Shown piece by piece: positions 5,423 to 48,944 of a stretch of DNA of 64,000 bases. The stretch covers positions 1-64,000 of the forward strand of contig CDMY01000476.1 of assembly GCA_001179505.1 (NCBI GenBank), given 5' to 3'. Each line of letters begins with the position of its first letter. The stretch's first letter is position 1. Both the position numbers and the translations under genes were made by a program. The stretch is from Vitrella brassicaformis CCMP3155. Lineage: Eukaryota > Protista > Chromerida. The notes beneath the pieces were generated by a model. The model had not been told where the DNA came from. It searched no databases and saw only the letters and a list, made by a program, of their open reading frames with translations.

Positions 5423-8400
5423 TCACTGGTTGTCCTCAGGCTGTCGTTTCTCTGCGGCAGATGCAGGTGTGGGCGGCGCCTCCAGCTTCGGCGGGGGTGT
5501 CTTTGGTGGTGAGGGAGGTGTCACCTCTCCATCCCCCTGGCCCTTCTTCTTCTTGGCCATTTTCCGAGACGGCGGCCTCACTATCTTCACAGGAGACCTG
5601 CCAGCCGGTGTGCTCGCCCTGCTCACGGCTGTGCCGGGACGGCTGCCCGTGGGCGTCGTGTCGGCCGAGGCAGGGGCCGTCTGCGGACGCCTCTCGATTG
5701 GGAGAGGGGGCGGGGTCGACGGTCCGGCCGATGACGGCTCCTGCTGCTGCTGTTGCTTGGCCATTTGCTGGTCTCTGGCCAGTTGTTTGGCTTGTGCCAC
5801 TGACGCTGCGACCCTCTCTTCGATGGCCTTCTCCTGCGCCTCTTGTTCTGCTGGGGGTGTCTTGGGCTTGGGGCGACGCTTCGCTTTGGCCTTTCCCCTC
5901 CCCTGTGGCCGGCTCTTGCTCTCAGGCGAGGACGCATCCCTCTCGCTGCCGTCCTTGTCGGCCTGCTGCTGTGGCTGTGCCTGTGCCATGTCTCCTCCCC
6001 TCTTCACCTGCATCAGCGGAGCCGCCACTGCAGCAGCCAGGACGGTGGCCGGGCTGCTAGCCTCTACAGCTGGGTCTGGCTGAGGCAGCTGCATGTCGAC
6101 GGGCCTCTCTGTCGGCCTGGGCACTGCCTTGACGGGCTCGGCGGCCTCTTTCGGCCGCTCGCGTGGTGGTGTCCGGCGTGAAGAGGGGATGGCTGGGGAA
6201 GTGGATGGCGGCTCCGCGGCGCTTGGAACGTCGTTGGGGCTACGGACGCTGATGTCGTGAGTGGCGAAGCAGGTGAATGTATTGTATTAGTGTAGTCACT
6301 GCTTGTTTCTCAGGTGGTGCTTACGTGAAGTTGGTGTGTTCCTCGATGGCTTGGTCTGACCTGACGGCCCTCTTGGTCGTCATCGGTCGCTTTATGCGCT
6401 CCAACACACATCTGACAGCAAGACAGAAGGGAGAGAACAGAACACGAGACACGGGCATGGGAGTGGGAGTCTCTCTGGCTGACCTCAGCCTCTCAATAGC
6501 CGTGTCCACGGCATCGATGTTGCCGGGCAGCAGCAGCTGGAGGGCAAACTTGATGAAAAGGAAAGCTGCAACACACAAACAGCATGGCCCTCACCAGGTG
6601 CTGCATGCACGTCTCTCTCATGTCACGCACCGAAGCAGTAGAAGAACAGGGACTCTAGCGCGTCAAGTGGGTCGTCGTCATCGTCGCCCTGCGGGCCGTC
6701 CTCCGCCTTGGGCAGTATCCCGCCAGCACTGCGCACTTTGGCCGTGAACGAGAGCAGTGATGCGTTCGTGAAGATGGCAAGGTAATTCAGACCACTGAAC
6801 GGATAGAATGTAACACATAGAGTGACGGACTGCTTGAAATTGTGATTCAGACGGCCCACCTGAAAATGGCATGCCAGCATCCGATGTCGAACTCTGCCTG
6901 TGGGTGAGGTCTTCTGACTAGCGTCTTCAGCTTTGTCGTGTCGACATAGAGCTCAAACAAAGAAGCCAGGAAGACCAGCAGACCAGCGAGAGGGAATGAA
7001 ATGGAGAACAGGGCGAGAAAGCCGAAGCTAATGCTCAGCTCGAGGTAGTCGTTGATAGTTCCGTCATACGCTAGGACAGCCTCGCCGTAGGGGTCCATCT
7101 CCATCTCGCTGTCGACTTGTTGGATGATCCTCGACACACCCTTCGCCCCACCTGGCCCACCCTTGACGCCGTCCTCCTTTGTCCGCTGCCTTTCTTTCCA
7201 CTGTGCGACGATCCACGGCCTGCCAAGCTCCACCACGTTCATCAGGGCCCGGATCACTATCAGCGAAGTCAGCTGGGCATTAAGCTCATCCATGCAGTCT
7301 GAACACACAAACAGAGTGAGACGGACGGGCATGTGAGGGGTGGGGTGCGTTGCGGTGGGTGCATTACTTGGTCGACAGCCTTCTCTGTGCTCCTTGGCAA
7401 AGGCAATGAAGAACAGTGAAGCATACGAGTTAACAAACTGAAACCCAAGACACACGCAAGAGCACAGTGACAGTGCCTCCCTCCCTCCTCTTGTGAGAGA
7501 GAGGTACCATAAAGAGGAAGCTCTTGACCGCATACGAGTACTGGAAGAGGGAGTATGTCCGGTGGTTCTCCCACTTTGTGAGCGCCAGACAGACCGGCCG
7601 ATAAGCGGCGTTGAATATGTTCAGCTACACGTAGATGAGACGACGGACCACACACATTGTGCAGGCGCCACGTCTTATTCTACCCACCTGAATGGCGGTG
7701 AGGAGACCGACGACGTGCCCGCTCATATCGTAATCGAGCACATAAAACCACCCCTTGTTAGCAAATGTTTTCTGCAGCACATGCATGTAAGGACGGACAG
7801 TCATTATCCTCTCGCACAAATGTCTAATGTCTCACACACCTTGAGCGATAAGATCAGGATGACAAGTCCCAAAGCAACGAGCGAGAAGAGCACACTGACA
7901 ACGGCCGCGACACTGATGCGGGCATATTTCCTCAGAGGAGCGAAGTAGAGCTCGCCGGGCTCCCCAGTCACCGGCGAGCGCCGCAATATGCCGAAGAACT
8001 GCATCCGCGGGGGCTCGCTCACCGCCTCCTGGTGTCCCACACGCCCGAACCATAGAGCAATGCGCAGCTGTCTGCAATACAACCGACAACGGCTTCGTGT
8101 GTGTGTGTCTGTGTGTGTGTGTGTGCCTACTTCCTTTCCCATGCGATCAGAAAGCATGTGGTCCAGATTGAGAGGAAGAGGGCGTTGACCAGTCCAACAC
8201 GATACTCGAACTCATCATCGAAATCCAAGTAGTACAAAATCTGAAAGGCCACACCAAAATCTGACAGGACAGTGGCTACACTCCTTCTCACCTGGAAAGC
8301 CATGCCAAGAGCAGCGGGCCAGAGCATGCACGCCGAATAGTGCCGCAGGAAGCAGAAGTACACAGCGATCTTCTCGCCATAGTAAAACGCCTCATTCCTG

Positions 8401-11400
8401 AGGCGACATTCCAGCACAGAGAGACACCAGTGAGAGGAAAAGCTTTACCGCTCCCCAGCCTCCCACCCACCTATCCTCAAACATGGCCCCTAGGCATCGT
8501 GCGGTGCTTCTGAGGCAGCCACAGCAGCCTTCGTCGGCAGGTCTTTTGAACAGCAACGCACCAGAGGCCTGTATGAATGAATCGCTCAGACAGAGACACA
8601 GCAGTGTGCCTCTAGTGTTGACGGACACAACACACCGGCCCCAATCGCACCTCTTCAATGGTGTTCTCGACGGCCTGCTCGTCGTCCTGAGTGACGTCTC
8701 TGTGCTCCTGCGCCCGCTTGCTCCACCTGGAAGCCATCTCGCCGCCGTCATCGATCATCACACGTGCTGACGGCACCTTGCGGTCGCTCTGCGCCTTTGC
8801 TTGTGTCGCTGATGCGCCCTTGTTCGCGTCTGTGTCGTCTTCTGGTGTGACGAATGACCGCATGAGGGCATAGAAGGTCTCAATGGAGGTGAGGGCTGTC
8901 ATGCGCAACGGCAGGTGGGCGTATAGCTTGTCAACAGGGCGGACTGCAAACGAGCAGGGAGGCAACACAGCGGCTCGGCTGTTTGCTTGTTTTTTGTTCC
9001 TTTGCACCAATTGGAAAGAAGTCAACGACAAGGTCCTCTGTGATGAGCGTATAGAGGTCGATCTGCCTCATGATCTGGTCGTAGATGAGCCGCAGACGGT
9101 CAGTGGGGCTGAAGGGAATCGACACACTCGCACCTGCGCCAACAAAATGTCCGATGCGGTGCTTGTGGGTGTGCCCGTGTCTCTGTACGTCTCACCTGTC
9201 TTCAGCTTTCGGCATGGATATCTTGACCACAGCAGCGCGTGATAGGTGCGATCGTACTCGGCCAGCAGACGGGTGACAGGCTGGCGCAGACCTGATATGG
9301 GGGGCACCAAATGGCGACGGGCATTCTTTTCTGTTTGATCGCCCCATCCATCATCGCTTGTTTACCCACCGAGTCGCTGCCACACCGACTTCAGCTCGAG
9401 CTGTCTCATCTTGACAACCAGCTTCCGGCCCCACACGCCCTCCTCCCGCAACCGCACCCTCGTCTCCAAGTTGACCTCCCGCATGGCGTGCAGGGCGTCC
9501 TTGCCAGCCTTTCTCTCCTCCAGGTACCGCAAATACGTCCGCTCAATCTCGCCCCTCACTGCCTCCTCTGCCTCGCCCCACTCGTCGACATACGCCTGTT
9601 CCGACGTGGGTGTCTGGGCACTCTCCTGCGTGGCCGAGGCGTCGGGCTTGGCGATGTTCAGGCGTTTGAATGGCGCGGACAGGGCTGCGGTAATGTCTAT
9701 GATGCCAGGGGTTGCGGCTGGGGCTTTGGGTCGCTTCTTGGGGGCGGTTGTGTGTGCGAGGCGTTCCAGGCTGCCTCGTCTCCGTCGAAAGTACGCGGCC
9801 TGGGCCTGGATGGAGCCGTTGGTCGTGGACTCTTCCTGCACACACGTATGTCGTCGATGCATGAAGGCGCCCTTGTCCCCCTCCGCCCGTGTCTGTCTGT
9901 TGCATACCGCTTGTTTGAGCATCGTGTCGGTGAGGTCTCGGTATGCGCTCTGCACCTGTCTCGACTGTTTCTCCTGCGGGCCTGCGTAGAAGAGCTCAGC
10001 CAGGGGAGTGAAGCGGCTGGTGCAGGGCTCGTAGCTCTGAACATACCATGAATGGGGCATAAGTGGGCCATCCGTGTTTGGCATGAGTACCTCAGGGTCA
10101 GCGACGAGTAGGTTGATAGCCAGGGGATATCCCCTGCGGAGAGCGGCCGACTCGAGGTCTTGCTCGTCGCACGCCACCAAAATGTAGATGAACCTGAGAC
10201 ACACACACACACACACACACACATGGACAGCGCGATCTTTTGCTTGGTTTCACTCACTGGTAGTTGGACGAGAATGCCATCTCTACGGTGAAGTTCAGAT
10301 GGTGTACTAGCTTCGTCACAATCACATTGCGCACCTGACATCCACACAGACACAGACACGAATATTCGTAGCAATTACCTCCCATCCGTCCAATCGGTCC
10401 ACCGACCAGTGACATGAAGTCAAAGCACGTCACTGGCGTTCTGGACTGACACCATCCATGGCCAGCTGCGACGAACGAGCTGCTTTGGGGCGCATTGTTC
10501 GCAGGGGGAGCGGTCGAGTCGGCGTCGGCTTGATTGCTGGGGCCTGACGCTCGTGGCTTTCCTGCTGCTGAGCGATCCTCCTGGGAGACACACGACATAA
10601 TGCAGCCAATGAAGGAAGGTACGTGAGACGAAAGGCATTATTCTCTTCGTACAGCCGGCGAGAAGCCTCCTCCGTGAGACCAAGCTTTCCTCTCGGACCC
10701 GTCCCTTGCGAGCTTCTCCTCGCCGCCCACGATGGGAATATGGACTTCATCGCTTGCCACCTTTGAAGAGCTCGCAGGCTTTCTTTTGCACCAGCCTTGT
10801 CGTCTTGGGGCGTTAGGCAGCTGCTCAAAGGCCTGCATGCGACAAACATGGCCTCAGCTTAAGGCGCTCTCAGTGCTTGCTTTTGGCTTGCTTGTTTCTC
10901 ACCTCCATGAATTTTTCTTCTTCGACTTTAAATCGCCGCTGCTGCTGACTGACGCCGTTGACGAAGACCTCTTCGCCTCTAAATGACTTCCGGAATAGGG
11001 CCTCGGCCTCTTCGTACGTCACGCCCCTCTTCCTCTTGGCTGTGGAGGGGTGATCGGGGTTGGGCACCTATATATGAGACAAACGTAGAATCAACGCCCA
11101 CACACACCGACATCCCCGAATGATTTGCAGGTGAGGCTGTTGGTTGCTTACAACGATGACATAGTCCCACTGCAGCACCCCTTCGTGAAACTTGGCATTC
11201 TGAGAGACAACTGCCTTGCCATCTCCCTCCCGAGCATCCCCAAGGAAGAAGTGCACCAGCCTGTCAGCCCCGGCAGCCCCACCATGTACCCCCTGACCCG
11301 TCTCAGTTTCAGTCTCCGTCGCGGCCGTCATTTGCGGGATCTCTGCTCGGGGGGCCGCTTGCCTTTGCTTGACGAGCCTCTTTTCCGCTGTGTCGAGTGC

Positions 11401-42304: not shown

Positions 42305-45140
42305 CTACAGGCCGTGCCAGCACTTCTTGTGCGGCACGACCGACACCTCCACCTGGTGCAGCAGGCTGGACTGCTGGCACATGGGCCCCATGACGTGCTC
42401 CTCGAGTGTGGTGGAGGTGGTGACGGGGATCTTGGGTGGGGGGCCCTGGCTGGCGCGCTTGAGCTCCTTCAACTTGCTGCACACACGCAGCGCAGAGAGA
42501 GACCACATGCAATCAAGGCATAATTGGTGGATGGATGGCGTGGGGCGCCCATGACTGAGTGAGTGAGGGAGTGGCTGACCGACCGCTTGGCGATGTCTCC
42601 GAGGTAGACGGCGGCGTACTTTGGCTTGAAGACGTCACTGTCCGCCAGGCGCCTCCCCTTCTCACGGGTCACGTACACCTCCACGATGGGCGGCGCGAAG
42701 GTGGTAGGGGGGCGGCTGGAGCCCTGAGCACGCACCTGGAGCTGCTCAACCCACAAACCAAGCTCGGCCTGAGAGGGAGGGGACAGGACACACACACACA
42801 CACACACACACACATTCACACGGTCGCAGCGGAAGGGTGGGTGGGGTGGGGAGGGGTGGGCGCTTACGCAGGACAGTATCGTCGTATTTTTCGGTATCTT
42901 GGTGACAAAGCTGTCCGTCACGGTGGCCGCCACCCGCACCACGTCAAACATCGACTGCATTAAGCGGACCATCCATCCATCCATAGGCGTGTGGTGTGCC
43001 GTGTTTCTCTCTGTGTGTTGTGCTTATCGGATGCATTGCAATGCATACCAGGCTGCCGTCGGCCATGTGGGCGAGATCGTAGGTCTTCTGAGTCAGATAT
43101 CGACGGCCGCCCCAGGGGGGGTCGATGACGGCCTGCACAGCACAAACACATCCGCATGATGGACGGACGTGTTGGCCTCTGTGCAGATGGGTGGGTTGGT
43201 GAGTATGTCGTGTGTCGACTGACTGACCAGGTCGGCCTTGAAGTCGTAGTTGTCCTACCGGTCTACTACGGACTCGTAGTCCTCGGGCAGGGCAATGACG
43301 GGCTCCACACCTGCACACCCATCCACACACACACACAAACACACACAGGGTGGTGGTGAGCGAGGGGTCTGTCTCTTCCTTCGTTGTATATTGCTACCGT
43401 ATTGTTTGGTGTTGTGCTCGAGTATCTCCACGTGCTCGGCTTCCTTATCCATACTATACACGCTGAGGCCCTCTCGCAACATTGCTATGGTATCCCCCCC
43501 TGCGCACACACACATACACAAGCACGACACACGAGGCATTCCGTCAGTCACATGTAGTGGATGTATGCGTGTGTGCCATTTGTGTGTGTACTGTATTATG
43601 TGTGTGTACCTGCCCCAGCAAAAAGGTCGACCACTGTGCCCTTGGGGTATAGCTGGCTGCAGCTGGCCGCCTGGTGGAGGGCGATGGCCTCTGGACTGAT
43701 ACTATATCTGGTCCACACACATACAACATGCACATCCATGGACCCTCTTCTTCGCCTCCCTCCCTCCCTCCCTCCCATGTGTGTCGTGTCGCTCCCTTAC
43801 GTCATCTCGTCATTCAGTTTGATAGGCCTGGTCGCCAGCCATCGCTGTCTCGCCTCCTTGCCCTTCCCAGCCGGTCCCTCTATGATTATTACCTTCACGA
43901 ACACCGAACCCTGCACAGCCACTCGGTGGGCGGCCTCGATGGCCTCCAGCTCCTGGCGCGTCGCCAGCCACATGGCGGAGGTCGTGGCGGGGTCGGGCCA
44001 TGTGGTGGTCATGGCTGAGTTGGTGGCCGGTGCGGCCGTCTGGTCTCCCGCCTTCTGCAGCACCGTCGCCTCCCGGGCCATACCCTCCTGCAACTCCCTG
44101 CACACATCAACACACATTCACACGGACTCGTTTGTGCAAGTGTATAAAGTGAAAGGCTCGTTTAGCTTGTGAATGTGTACCGCTTGGCCGCCTCGATGCG
44201 CTGTATGTAGGTAACCATGGCCTCTGCCTCCCTCCCTTGCTGACTCTGCACATACCCACACGCCATGCCACGATAGGCACACGGAGAGATGGATGAATGT
44301 CATGGATGTGCCGGTGCAGACGTGTGTGTGTGTTGGGGGTTAGTGGGGGGGTGGGGGGGTGGCGTACGCACCTCGGCCTTCGGTGTGGCGGTGACGGGCA
44401 CCTCGTTGCCGTCGGGGAACATGCAGGTGCTCTTGCCGTGCATCTTGCCGTTGACCCCGTCGCTCTCGTACTCCACCACGTTGTCCTTGGCGCTCACGGG
44501 CGTCTCCGCGCCCTCGCCGTGGCCCTTGTCGTTGCGCCACTGGCCCTGGTACACGTCACCCTCGAAGTAGCGGTAGGTCCCCCGGCCGTGCATCGTGCCG
44601 TCCACCCAGTCGCCCTCGCACTCGGCTCCTTTCTGGTAGGTCAGCTTGCCCTCGCCGTTGATGCGGCCGTGCTCCCACTGGCCCTCGTAGCGGTTGCCGC
44701 TCGCAAACAGCGCCGTGCCGTGGCCGTGGATGCGGTCGTCGACCCACTGACCCTCGAACAACTCACCCTCGTCCTCGTACTTCTCGTGCCCTGCACACCA
44801 CACCACACCACACCACACCATGACACGTGGACCGATGGATGGATGGATGGATTTGTTCCCGTGTGCTCGTGTTACTGGCTCACCGTTGTGTTTGATGACA
44901 GAGCCGTCGGCCAGCATGAGATCAGCCTTAAGGAACGCGGCCGGCGGCGGGCTCTTGGGCACCAGCTCGGCGACTAGCATGTCCATGATAGACATTGGTG
45001 GCTCCTCGTCCTCCGCCTGCACGCGGCCATTCAGAGAGAGAGAGAGAGAGAAGATGAAATGCGGCCCGAGAGTGGGGGAGATGGGCAGAGGGTGACGTGT
45101 ACAGCTGGGTGACATAGAAATGTGCGCTTTTCCTGACCAT
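42305..45140 (-). CDS. MORN-repeat / Tgs1-type RNA cap guanine-N2 methyltransferase fusion protein
   Basis: Tgs1 motifs: IKLNDEMT|YSISPEAIA, VVDLFAGAG|GDTIAM, ILEHNTKQY|GV, VIDPPWGG..Y, KIPKN. An upstream MORN exon (44372-44791) splices phase 0 to 44245, then phase 2 to 44097, in frame with the methyltransferase. Start could be 45140 or 44995. Confidence 0.8.
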
Positions 45141-45876
45141 CTTGGTGTTGGTTTGTGTGTCGTTCGGCCTCCCTATCCCTCTCATCAGATACCCCCACAG
45201 TCCCCTGCCAGACAGCACGCGGCAGCCACTTGAGGAACGGAGTGCACCACCTGGCCTTGCTCTCGCCTCACCTGACGTAATCCATCTGTATCCTTATCTG
45301 TATCAATCACTCAGTCAGACAGACCTGCACCACACAGCACACAGACAGCAAAGGCACTCATTCGGCGTCACGTCCGATGCAGTGCAGCGCCACACATCAT
45401 CATGATGGCGTGAATGCAGGAAAGAGATGTCAGCGGCCTTTTCCCCTTTGGCCCCTCCGAATACTCACCGTTATGGTCTCCTCTCTCGCCTACGAGGGCT
45501 CACTCTACTCGGGCTCACTCGCCGCTGAAGGTTTTTATGCTGCTGAAAGGCGCACTGGCAGTTGGCGCGCTCGATGTCATCTCTCGTTTTCAGCAGCCAG
45601 AAGCTTAATTTGCTCTGCAGCCGCGGTGACCTGGGGAAAGGCGCGATCGCGATCATCCGTGAAATCGCTCTCTTTGGAGAGGCAGTTTCGCGTGACGGTG
45701 GAGGCCTCGCCACGCTTCGTCGGTGCTCATTCTCCACAGCTGTGTTTGGCTGGATCGCCGACAGCGGCATCAACGAAGGGACGGTGCAGCCACTGATTAG
45801 CTGCTGATCCGCGTCTTGGTCGTTGGCCAAACAGAGAAGGGTCTGTCTGTCTGTTCAACGAAGTGTGTCAGAGGCC

Positions 45877-48944
<3,068 letters not shown>

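What the first reader, a model, noticed from the sequence alone, without database searches (positions are those of the whole stretch)
42305..45140. Chimeric gene: decayed MORN1-like fragment fused in frame to an RNA cap methyltransferase
The MORN exon (EGQWVDDRIHGHGTALFASGNRYEGQWEHGRINGEGKLTY...VDGTMHGRGTYRY.EGDVY.GQWRND..HG...VSAKDNVVEY...VNGKMHG) closely tracks, from my recollection, apicomplexan MORN1, the basal-complex/cortical scaffold, including its distinctive VSAK..VVE insertion. It appears to have two whole-repeat deletions and degenerate substitutions (W>G, Y>C). Canonical splice sites with matching phases (44372 to 44245, then to 44097) connect it to a Tgs1 domain with all core motifs. 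I know of no MORN-Tgs1 architecture. If expressed, it could tether cap hypermethylation to the cortex or membranes, or be a young exon-shuffling product.
Basis: partly seen in the sequence, partly recalled or inferred. Interest (0 to 1): 0.75.

Follow-up and report, generated by a model that had tools for sequence, protein, structure and literature searches.

The report
Decaying MORN1 fragment on Tgs1-like gene
In the alga Vitrella brassicaformis, a copied piece of the scaffold gene MORN1 is spliced in frame onto a divergent RNA-cap methyltransferase gene, but this is one of several such copies, the MORN piece evolves like junk, and this copy has a premature stop, so it is a gene-birth-and-decay curiosity, not a working new enzyme.

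Summary
On the minus strand (45285-42305), a MORN exon (44790-44372) joins a Tgs1-type (Methyltransf_15) methyltransferase through phase-compatible GT-AG introns. The locus is already a public Augustus model in Vitrella brassicaformis CCMP3155 (CEM16023.1 / A0A0G4FP57, 588 aa, MORN + Methyltransf_15).

- **Premature stop.** Methyltransferase exon 6 has an in-frame TAG (43257-43255). Paralogues have TGG or ATG there. The public model avoids it with a cryptic donor, dropping 13 conserved residues.
- **Not a one-off.** Copies with the same layout lie on contigs C430, C572 and C248, with fragments on C379 and C629. The canonical Tgs1 is on C562 and the real MORN1 on C22.
- **Exon 3 boundary.** Exon 3 runs to 43801, not 43893.

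The MORN exon is 88% identical in DNA to MORN1 exon 2. It evolves neutrally (dN/dS about 1), while the flanking exons are constrained (0.1-0.3). Among the best 150 hits from 1.84 billion protein representatives, only Vitrella proteins combine the two domains. I found no transcript evidence.

Verdict: a real, lineage-specific exon-capture family with a decaying MORN spacer, and this copy is probably a young pseudogene. The scan flagged a similar fusion on another piece of this genome (s1-227077).

The parts
45272..45285 (-). Annotated first coding exon (ATG at 45285-45283)
   Evidence: Matches residues 1-4 of the public model P0062.
45138..45204 (-). Second coding exon ('GLWGYLMRGIGRPND...'), conserved in paralogue models
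   Evidence: 100% tblastn match to P0062 residues 5-27. Related peptides occur in P0124, P0122 and P0121.
44884..45016 (-). Exon E0, a family-specific N-terminal exon under purifying selection
   Evidence: Seven copies in the genome. dN/dS is 0.11-0.28 against the C572, C629 and C248 copies, and neutrality is rejected.
44372..44790 (-). Exon E1, a MORN array derived from MORN1 exon 2 (about 5-6 repeats, degraded)
   Evidence: Pfam MORN. MORN1 proteins are the top solved-structure hits. 88% DNA identity to MORN1 on C22. dN/dS is about 1.
44181..44245 (-). Exon E2, start of the coiled-coil-like linker
   Evidence: Phase-compatible GT-AG junctions. 100% protein identity to the C430 copy.
43801..44097 (-). 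Exon E3, linker plus the start of the Tgs1 domain ('RWLATRPIKLNDEM')
   Evidence: The donor ac|GTAAGG at 43800 is needed to stay in frame. Same boundary in P0062. dN/dS for the linker is 0.30.
43610..43707 (-). Exon E4, 'SISPE' and the first part of SAM-binding motif I (VVDLFAGAG)
   Evidence: Aligned to human TGS1 through the paralogue.
43398..43499 (-). Exon E5, the rest of motif I and the acidic SAM-ribose residue (SMDKE)
   Evidence: Methyltransf_15 at 3.9e-6 on this exon alone.
43228..43310 (-). Ancestral exon E6. The public model uses only 43310-43267, via a cryptic donor.
   Evidence: The full exon is intact in C430 and C379. Its 3' part aligns to human TGS1 'LKADVV'.
43255..43257 (-). 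In-frame TAG nonsense codon in exon E6
   Evidence: TGG in C430 and ATG in C379 at the same codon. These are the only three copies of this stretch in the genome.
43049..43132 (-). Exon E7, motif IV DPPWGG (cap-stacking Trp)
42868..42954 (-). Exon E8, 'IPKN' (human 'LPRN')
42582..42768 (-). Exon E9, C-terminal part of the methyltransferase fold ('YLGDIAK')
42305..42476 (-). Exon E10, the family-specific C-terminal tail, with stop TAG at 42307-42305
   Evidence: dN/dS is 0.24.

Best explanation
The locus is a real chimeric gene of Vitrella brassicaformis. It belongs to a Vitrella-specific sub-family of a lineage-expanded, divergent Tgs1-like (cap guanine-N2 methyltransferase fold) gene family.

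How it arose (shown): a genomic DNA copy of MORN1 exons 2(-3) was captured between a family-specific N-terminal exon set and the linker and methyltransferase exons. The resulting unit, especially its 5' cassette, has since been duplicated. The window and C430 copies show patchy identity that fits gene conversion.

State of the MORN array (partly inferred): the indels in the window and C572 copies keep the reading frame. The exons on both sides are under purifying selection, and skipping E1 would break the frame. So the array is most likely translated. Its sequence, however, evolves neutrally, with repeat-unit deletions and loss of consensus Gly, Tyr and Trp residues. I read it as a decaying passenger or spacer, not a working MORN1-type scaffold module.

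State of this copy (shown, consequence inferred): it has a recent TGG->TAG nonsense change in methyltransferase exon 6, just before the DPPWGG motif. As assembled it cannot encode an intact enzyme. It is a very young pseudogene, or at best produces a cryptically spliced product lacking 13 conserved core residues.
For: Gene model and identity:
- Exon model with GT-AG introns of 83-126 nt and matching phases.
- The public model P0062 (CEM16023.1) has the same exons except the exon 6 dodge.
- Pfam finds MORN (79.5 bits) plus Methyltransf_15 (67 bits).

Origin:
- The real MORN1 is on C22; E1 is 88% identical to it in DNA.
- In the C572 copy the homology runs through the MORN1 intron and next exon, so the capture was at DNA level.

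Family:
- Full paralogue on C430, all exons 73-100% identical.
- C572 (P0124) and C248 have the same layout. Fragments lie on C379 and C629.
- The canonical Tgs1 is on C562.

Selection:
- MORN dN/dS is 1.15-1.28 against C430 (the two alignments used), 1.02 against MORN1 and 0.91 against C572. None is distinguishable from neutral (p 0.62-0.63).
- Methyltransferase exons 0.25, linker 0.30, tail 0.24, E0 0.11-0.28. Neutrality is rejected for the methyltransferase exons and E0.
- All indels against MORN1 in the window and C572 copies are in frame.

The stop codon:
- TAG here, TGG or ATG in the paralogues.
- The skipped residues align to the human TGS1 core.
- Lineage-specific changes in exons 4-8 are symmetric (2 non-synonymous, 6 synonymous each), so the lesion is recent.

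Gene conversion:
- Identity to C430 is mosaic: 94-98% across E1, intron 1 and E2, and 96% across E6 and intron 6, against 69-92% elsewhere.
Against: - I obtained no transcript data.
- The TAG could be an assembly error or a strain-specific allele.
- UniRef100_A0A0G4FP57 is listed with n=2 members at species level. This hints that a transcriptome-derived sequence identical to part of the model exists, so the locus may be transcribed with the annotated splicing.
- dN/dS of about 1 can also arise from diversifying selection, and gene conversion distorts dS.
- The MORN ORF is intact in this copy.
Confidence: 0.6

Rival explanations
1. Functional tethered enzyme. The MORN array still folds and binds MORN1, membranes or the cortex. 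It localises a Tgs1-like methyltransferase, and the TAG is bypassed or is an error.
For: - The open MORN frame lies between constrained exons, and the indels in the window and C572 copies keep the frame.
- The layout is retained at four loci.
- The methyltransferase motifs are kept and under purifying selection.
- MORN still scores 79.5 bits in Pfam.
Against: - MORN dN/dS is about 1 in every comparison, with consensus-destroying changes and repeat losses.
- The C430 copy has a +1 frameshift and falls below the Pfam MORN threshold.
- Only the N-terminal half of MORN1 is present, without the C-terminal repeats that form the dimer in the solved MORN1 structures (my reading of the literature behind 6T4D, 6T4R and 6T6Q; not tested here).
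- TAG in exon 6.
Confidence: 0.12
2. An intact gene that was mis-assembled. The TAG is a sequencing or assembly error or a private allele. The locus encodes a full Tgs1-like enzyme carrying a neutral MORN-derived N-terminal spacer.
For: - There is no excess of non-synonymous change on the window lineage in exons 4-8.
- The TAG sits in a 96%-identical tract and differs from the paralogue's TGG by one base.
- The UniRef100 n=2 hint of a matching transcript-derived sequence.
Against: - The public Augustus model had to splice around the TAG, so the TAG is in the deposited assembly.
- Other family copies are demonstrably broken, so pseudogenisation is common here.
- Base-level errors in Illumina assemblies are rare (general knowledge).
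Confidence: 0.18
3. Two units, not one protein. The N-terminal exons plus the MORN exon form a separate short gene or a non-coding leader, and the methyltransferase is translated from a downstream ATG (the Met in E2 or E3).
For: - The 5' cassette (flank, E0, start of MORN) duplicates on its own: three tandem copies on C629 and one on C379.
- The C430 MORN exon is frameshifted while its methyltransferase is intact.
- The Met in E2 is conserved in all E2-like copies.
Against: - The E1-E2 gap is only 126 nt, fits the gene's intron size range (83-126 nt), and has GT-AG ends in compatible phase.
- E0 is under purifying selection, and the window and C572 MORN exons have kept the frame.
- The public models join the two parts.
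Confidence: 0.1

Closest known systems
Trimethylguanosine synthase Tgs1 (human TGS1, PDB 3GDH/3EGI; Pfam PF09445)
   Same: - Same class I methyltransferase fold family.
- TGS1 chains are the only methyltransferases among the solved-structure hits (E 1.5e-19 for the 79%-identical paralogue).
- Motif I, the acidic SAM-ribose residue, the (S/D)PPWGG Trp and the P(R/K)N motif are all conserved.
   Different: - Not the orthologue. The canonical Tgs1 with 'YWQQRYSLFSRFDEGI' is on C562 and is only 32% identical.
- The N-terminal cap-pocket segment is shortened.
- It carries a family-specific C-terminal tail, a coiled-coil linker and the MORN/E0 N-terminus.
- This copy has a nonsense codon.
MORN1 (apicomplexan/chromerid basal-complex scaffold; PDB 6T4D, 6T4R, 6T69, 6T6Q)
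   Same: - The MORN exon derives from this genome's MORN1 exon 2 (88% DNA identity).
- It includes the long-loop repeat.
- MORN1 proteins are the top solved-structure hits.
   Different: - Only about 5-6 degraded N-terminal-half repeats are present. The C-terminal half is absent.
- It evolves neutrally, whereas the two MORN1 copies on C22 show dN/dS of 0.12.
Other MORN-plus-enzyme architectures (SETD7 lysine methyltransferase, plant PIP5K, Kinesin-MORN)
   Same: An N-terminal MORN array is fused to a catalytic domain. PIP5K and Kinesin-MORN appear among the solved-structure hits. SETD7 is from my own knowledge.
   Different: In those proteins the MORN array is conserved and functional, and the catalytic partners are unrelated to Tgs1. 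Here the array shows no constraint.

Membership tests
Tgs1 / Methyltransf_15 (PF09445) | Pfam profile match above the gathering score | tested here: met
   P0062 scores 67 bits (cut-off 22) and exon 5 alone scores 27 bits.
Tgs1 / Methyltransf_15 (PF09445) | SAM-binding motif I (VVDxFxGxGGN) and the downstream acidic residue | tested here: met
   VVDLFAGAGGD and SMDKE, aligned to human TGS1 through the paralogue.
Tgs1 / Methyltransf_15 (PF09445) | Motif IV SPPWGG with the cap-stacking Trp, and the PRN motif | tested here: met
   DPPWGG in exon 7. IPKN in exon 8, with Lys in place of Arg.
Tgs1 / Methyltransf_15 (PF09445) | Uninterrupted catalytic domain | tested here: not met
   In-frame TAG at 43257-43255, where paralogues have TGG or ATG. 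The public model drops 13 core residues to avoid it.
Tgs1 / Methyltransf_15 (PF09445) | N-terminal cap-pocket segment (human 'YWAQRYRLFSRFDDGIKLD') | tested here: inconclusive
   Only 'RWLATRPIKLNDE' remains. The canonical copy on C562 has the full segment.
Tgs1 / Methyltransf_15 (PF09445) | Orthology to the canonical Tgs1 of the organism | tested here: not met
   The best PF09445 locus is on C562 (85 bits), and it is 32% identical over 123 residues to the paralogue P0121.
Tgs1 / Methyltransf_15 (PF09445) | m7G-cap N2-methyltransferase activity | not testable with these tools
   Needs an enzyme assay.
MORN1 | MORN repeats whose closest relatives are MORN1 proteins | tested here: met
   Pfam MORN 9e-25. 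MORN1 chains score E 2.6e-52 to 2e-40 and the next family 4e-28.
MORN1 | Full array of about 15 repeats including the C-terminal half | tested here: not met
   Only a shortened copy of MORN1 exon 2 is present. The remaining MORN1 exons are on C22.
MORN1 | Strong purifying selection | tested here: not met
   dN/dS is 0.9-1.3 here, against 0.12 between the two MORN1 copies.

The most novel reading that the evidence does not exclude
The MORN/E0 cassette is a functional, mobile N-terminal module. Ectopic recombination has grafted it onto several diverged Tgs1-like paralogues, and it still docks these RNA methyltransferases onto MORN1-based cortical or basal structures. This would give chromerids spatially localised cap or RNA guanine-N2 methylation. 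The high dN/dS would then reflect diversifying selection rather than neutral change.
Probability: 0.08. Interest if true: 0.7.

Novelty: new variant of a known kind. Interest (0 to 1): 0.38.

Why it matters
- **Exon shuffling in progress.** The donor (MORN1 on C22), the recipient family, an intermediate that keeps the donor's intron (C572), further-decayed forms (window, C430) and broken fragments (C379, C629) all sit in one genome.
- **Annotation caution.** An automatic gene model and its UniProt name ('Trimethylguanosine synthase') can hide a nonsense codon behind an invented splice site.
- **An uncharacterised family.** Vitrella has an expansion of divergent Tgs1-like methyltransferases, at least one of them expressed (C445). 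Their substrates are unknown.
- **Function.** The case for a new functional 'cortex-tethered cap methylase' is weak.

Tried and rejected
- **Word-index protein search with exon 3 alone**: no hits, because the length limits exclude the full-length models.
- **Two scans of JGI metagenome/metatranscriptome contigs** for cDNA of this gene, with exon 3 and then P0062. They returned only distant MORN proteins, so the splicing and the TAG could not be checked on RNA.
- **Supplements of the genome paper**: they hold nothing on this gene.
- **Literature searches** for MORN + trimethylguanosine synthase, and Vitrella + trimethylguanosine: nothing relevant.
- **Donor at 43893 for exon 3:** rejected because it breaks the frame.
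- **Alternative genetic code (TAG as sense):** considered, but the paralogues carry TGG or ATG at that codon and the gene itself ends on TAG. Not tested genome-wide.
- **Transposon carriage of the 5' cassette:** the copies share a 5' boundary near 45480, but I saw no transposon hallmarks and did not pursue it.
- **Structure prediction:** not run. It would not discriminate between the explanations.
- **Joined spliced model:** Exons were searched one by one by reference, and full-length searches used only public proteins by id.
Full report
**Organism and locus**

The assembly has 72.70 Mb in 1064 contigs. This matches the published Vitrella brassicaformis CCMP3155 assembly (72.7 Mb, 1064 scaffolds; PMC4501334). 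A database protein from a 69,464-bp contig, which fits the length of this window's contig, is named as Vitrella brassicaformis CCMP3155: CEM16023.1 / UniRef100_A0A0G4FP57, 'Trimethylguanosine synthase'. It maps onto the window at 45285-42305, minus strand.

**Gene model**

Reading the minus strand and checking phases gives these exons:

| Exon | Coordinates | Content |
|---|---|---|
| first | 45285-45272 | ATG |
| second | 45204-45138 | conserved N-terminal peptide |
| E0 | 45016-44884 | family-specific N-terminal exon |
| E1 | 44790-44372 | MORN array |
| E2 | 44245-44181 | linker |
| E3 | 44097-43801 | linker and start of the Tgs1 domain |
| E4 | 43707-43610 | motif I, first part |
| E5 | 43499-43398 | motif I, rest |
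| E6 | 43310-43228 | contains the TAG |
| E7 | 43132-43049 | DPPWGG |
| E8 | 42954-42868 | IPKN |
| E9 | 42768-42582 | end of the fold |
| E10 | 42476-42305 | tail and stop |

- All introns are GT-AG and 83-126 nt long.
- Exon 3 cannot end at 43893, because that breaks the frame with exon 4. It must run to the donor at 43800, as in the public model.
Exons were searched one at a time by reference. Full-length searches used the public proteins P0062, P0121 and P0124 by id. Scripts computed phases and per-exon statistics only.

**Domains**

- Pfam finds MORN at 9e-25 on the ORF that holds E1, and Methyltransf_15 on exon 5 alone.
- On the public model, MORN scores 79.5 bits and Methyltransf_15 scores 67 bits.
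- The 79%-identical paralogue matches human TGS1 structures 3EGI and 3GDH at E 1.5e-19. No other methyltransferase appears among the solved-structure hits at E below 1e-5.
- In that alignment motif I, the acidic residue, the DPPWGG Trp and P(K/R)N are conserved.

**The missed stop codon**

- Exon 6 reads '...ESVVDR*DNYDFKADL', with TAG at 43257-43255.
- The C430 paralogue has TGG and the C379 fragment has ATG at that codon. These are the only three copies of this stretch in the genome.
- The residues after the stop align to human TGS1 'LKADVV', which leads into SPPWGG. They are therefore ancestral coding sequence.
- The public Augustus model avoids the stop with a cryptic donor (GTA|GTAGAC at 43266). 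This removes 13 residues that every other family member keeps.
- In exons 4-8 the window and C430 lineages each show 2 non-synonymous and 6 synonymous changes. There is no sign yet of relaxed constraint, so the lesion is young or is an error.

**Origin of the MORN exon**

- The best solved relatives of E1 are MORN1 proteins (E 2.6e-52 to 2e-40; the next family scores 4e-28).
- The genome's own MORN1 sits as a tandem pair on C22. E1 is 77-80% identical to its exon 2 in protein and 88% in DNA.
- The homology starts exactly at the acceptor of MORN1 exon 2.
- In the C572 paralogue the DNA homology runs on through the MORN1 intron into MORN1 exon 3 (81% over 491 nt). The capture was therefore of genomic DNA, not cDNA.
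- Relative to MORN1, the window copy lacks 16 residues, one residue, and one exact 23-residue repeat. It has W>G and Y>C changes at consensus positions. Its last 13 codons come from a downstream linker exon that C572 still keeps separate.
- The 'VSAK.NVVE' long loop is present in Vitrella MORN1. MORN1-like proteins from other sources have a longer repeat at the same place.

**A family, not a one-off**

- All eleven exons recur in order on C430 at 73-100% protein identity. A continuous 3-kb DNA alignment there is 82% identical.
- C572 (public model P0124, 703 aa) and C248 have the same order: E0, MORN, linker, methyltransferase.
- C379 holds a methyltransferase fragment lacking motif I, plus a detached 5' cassette. 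C629 holds three tandem 5' cassettes with a truncated MORN piece.
- Non-MORN relatives share the methyltransferase and the C-terminal tail: C445 (P0266) and C545 (P0168).
- The C445 gene is expressed. A spliced ORF (P0126) lies on JGI contigs from samples 3300017148 and 3300017297.
- The canonical Tgs1 is on C562.
- The C430 copy is also damaged. Its MORN exon has a +1 frameshift and a rearranged 5' part, which its public model again splices around. Its MORN score falls below the Pfam threshold.

**Selection**

| Region | Comparison | dN/dS |
|---|---|---|
| MORN exon | window vs C430 | 1.15-1.28 (two alignments) |
| MORN exon | window vs MORN1 | 1.02 |
| MORN exon | window vs C572 | 0.91 |
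| Linker (E2, E3) | window vs C430 | 0.30 |
| Methyltransferase (E4-E9) | window vs C430 | 0.25 |
| Tail (E10) | window vs C430 | 0.24 |
| E0 | window vs C572, C629, C248 | 0.11-0.28 |
| MORN1 itself | C22a vs C22b | 0.12 |

- The MORN counts fit neutrality (p 0.62-0.63). They differ from the methyltransferase exons (p 0.02) and from E0 (p 0.014).
- Neutrality is rejected for the methyltransferase exons (p 4e-7) and for E0 (p 0.006 and 7e-5).
- All indels in the window and C572 MORN exons keep the frame.
- Skipping E1 (419 nt) would break the frame.
- My reading is that the MORN segment is translated as part of one protein, but its sequence is not under constraint.

**Gene conversion**

- Identity between the window and C430 copies is mosaic. 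It is 94-98% across E1, intron 1 and E2, and 96% across E6 and intron 6, against 69-92% elsewhere.
- The 5' flank plus E0 is 78% identical in DNA between the window and C572, while their methyltransferase exons are only 40-46% identical in protein.
- This suggests the 5' cassette has moved or been homogenised between diverged paralogues.

**Distribution**

- An exhaustive HMMER search of 1.84 billion representatives with P0121 gave 6916 hits. Among the best 150, only the Vitrella proteins P0062/P0121 and P0124 combine MORN and the methyltransferase.
- Any protein combining a canonical Tgs1 domain (about 72-85 bits alone) with several MORN repeats should have scored above the rank-150 cut-off of 71 bits.
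- No paper describes the architecture.

**What remains open**

- Expression and actual splicing.
- Whether the TAG is present in the reads.
- Enzymatic activity of any family member.
- The UniRef100 entry is listed with two members at species level. This hints at a transcriptome-derived sequence identical to part of the model, but I could not open it.

**Verdict**

The chimera is real and specific to Vitrella as far as the databases show. It is already a public gene model, it is one of a family, its MORN part is decaying, and this copy is most likely a young pseudogene.

Noticed in passing
L021 (G000:C22:110000-119999), minus strand, about 5460-9330: The true MORN1 orthologue is present as two tandem, near-identical copies (dS 0.06, dN/dS 0.12) separated by runs of N. 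This may be a real tandem duplication or an assembly artefact.
   Followed up: partly
P0003 (MMETSP Transcript_18526); G000:C708:276610-277566 (-): A Vitrella transcriptome ORF joins the MORN1 N-terminal half (94% identical to C22) to an unrelated C-terminal region encoded on C708. The join falls in mid-repeat. It is either another MORN1-derived chimera or a chimeric transcript assembly.
   Followed up: partly
L047 (G000:C629:25000-34999), minus strand, about 6018-8613: Three tandem copies of the 5' cassette (flank, E0, truncated MORN start) plus an E2-like piece, with stops and no methyltransferase. All cassette copies share a 5' homology boundary near window 45480.
   Followed up: partly
G000:C572 (2510-2686, 29053-29223, 42398-42574, 44228-44404), C619, C445, C545, C802: A lineage-specific expansion of divergent Tgs1-like methyltransferases with a shared C-terminal tail. 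Four exon-9-like hits lie on contig C572 alone. Substrates are unknown, and at least the C445 member is expressed.
   Followed up: partly
window 45823-46840, plus strand: A protein-kinase gene, apparently CDPK-like by eye ('[12 protein letters not shown]...', 'HRDVKPE'), lies head-to-head with the MORN-Tgs gene, about 540 bp from its annotated ATG. No family scan was run on it.
   Followed up: no
window 42780-42830, 44800-44860 and many introns: Introns are rich in (CA/TG)n and (TGGA)n microsatellites. These translate as the recurrent 'HPSIHPSI' and 'WMDGWMDG' strings in ORF lists.
   Followed up: no
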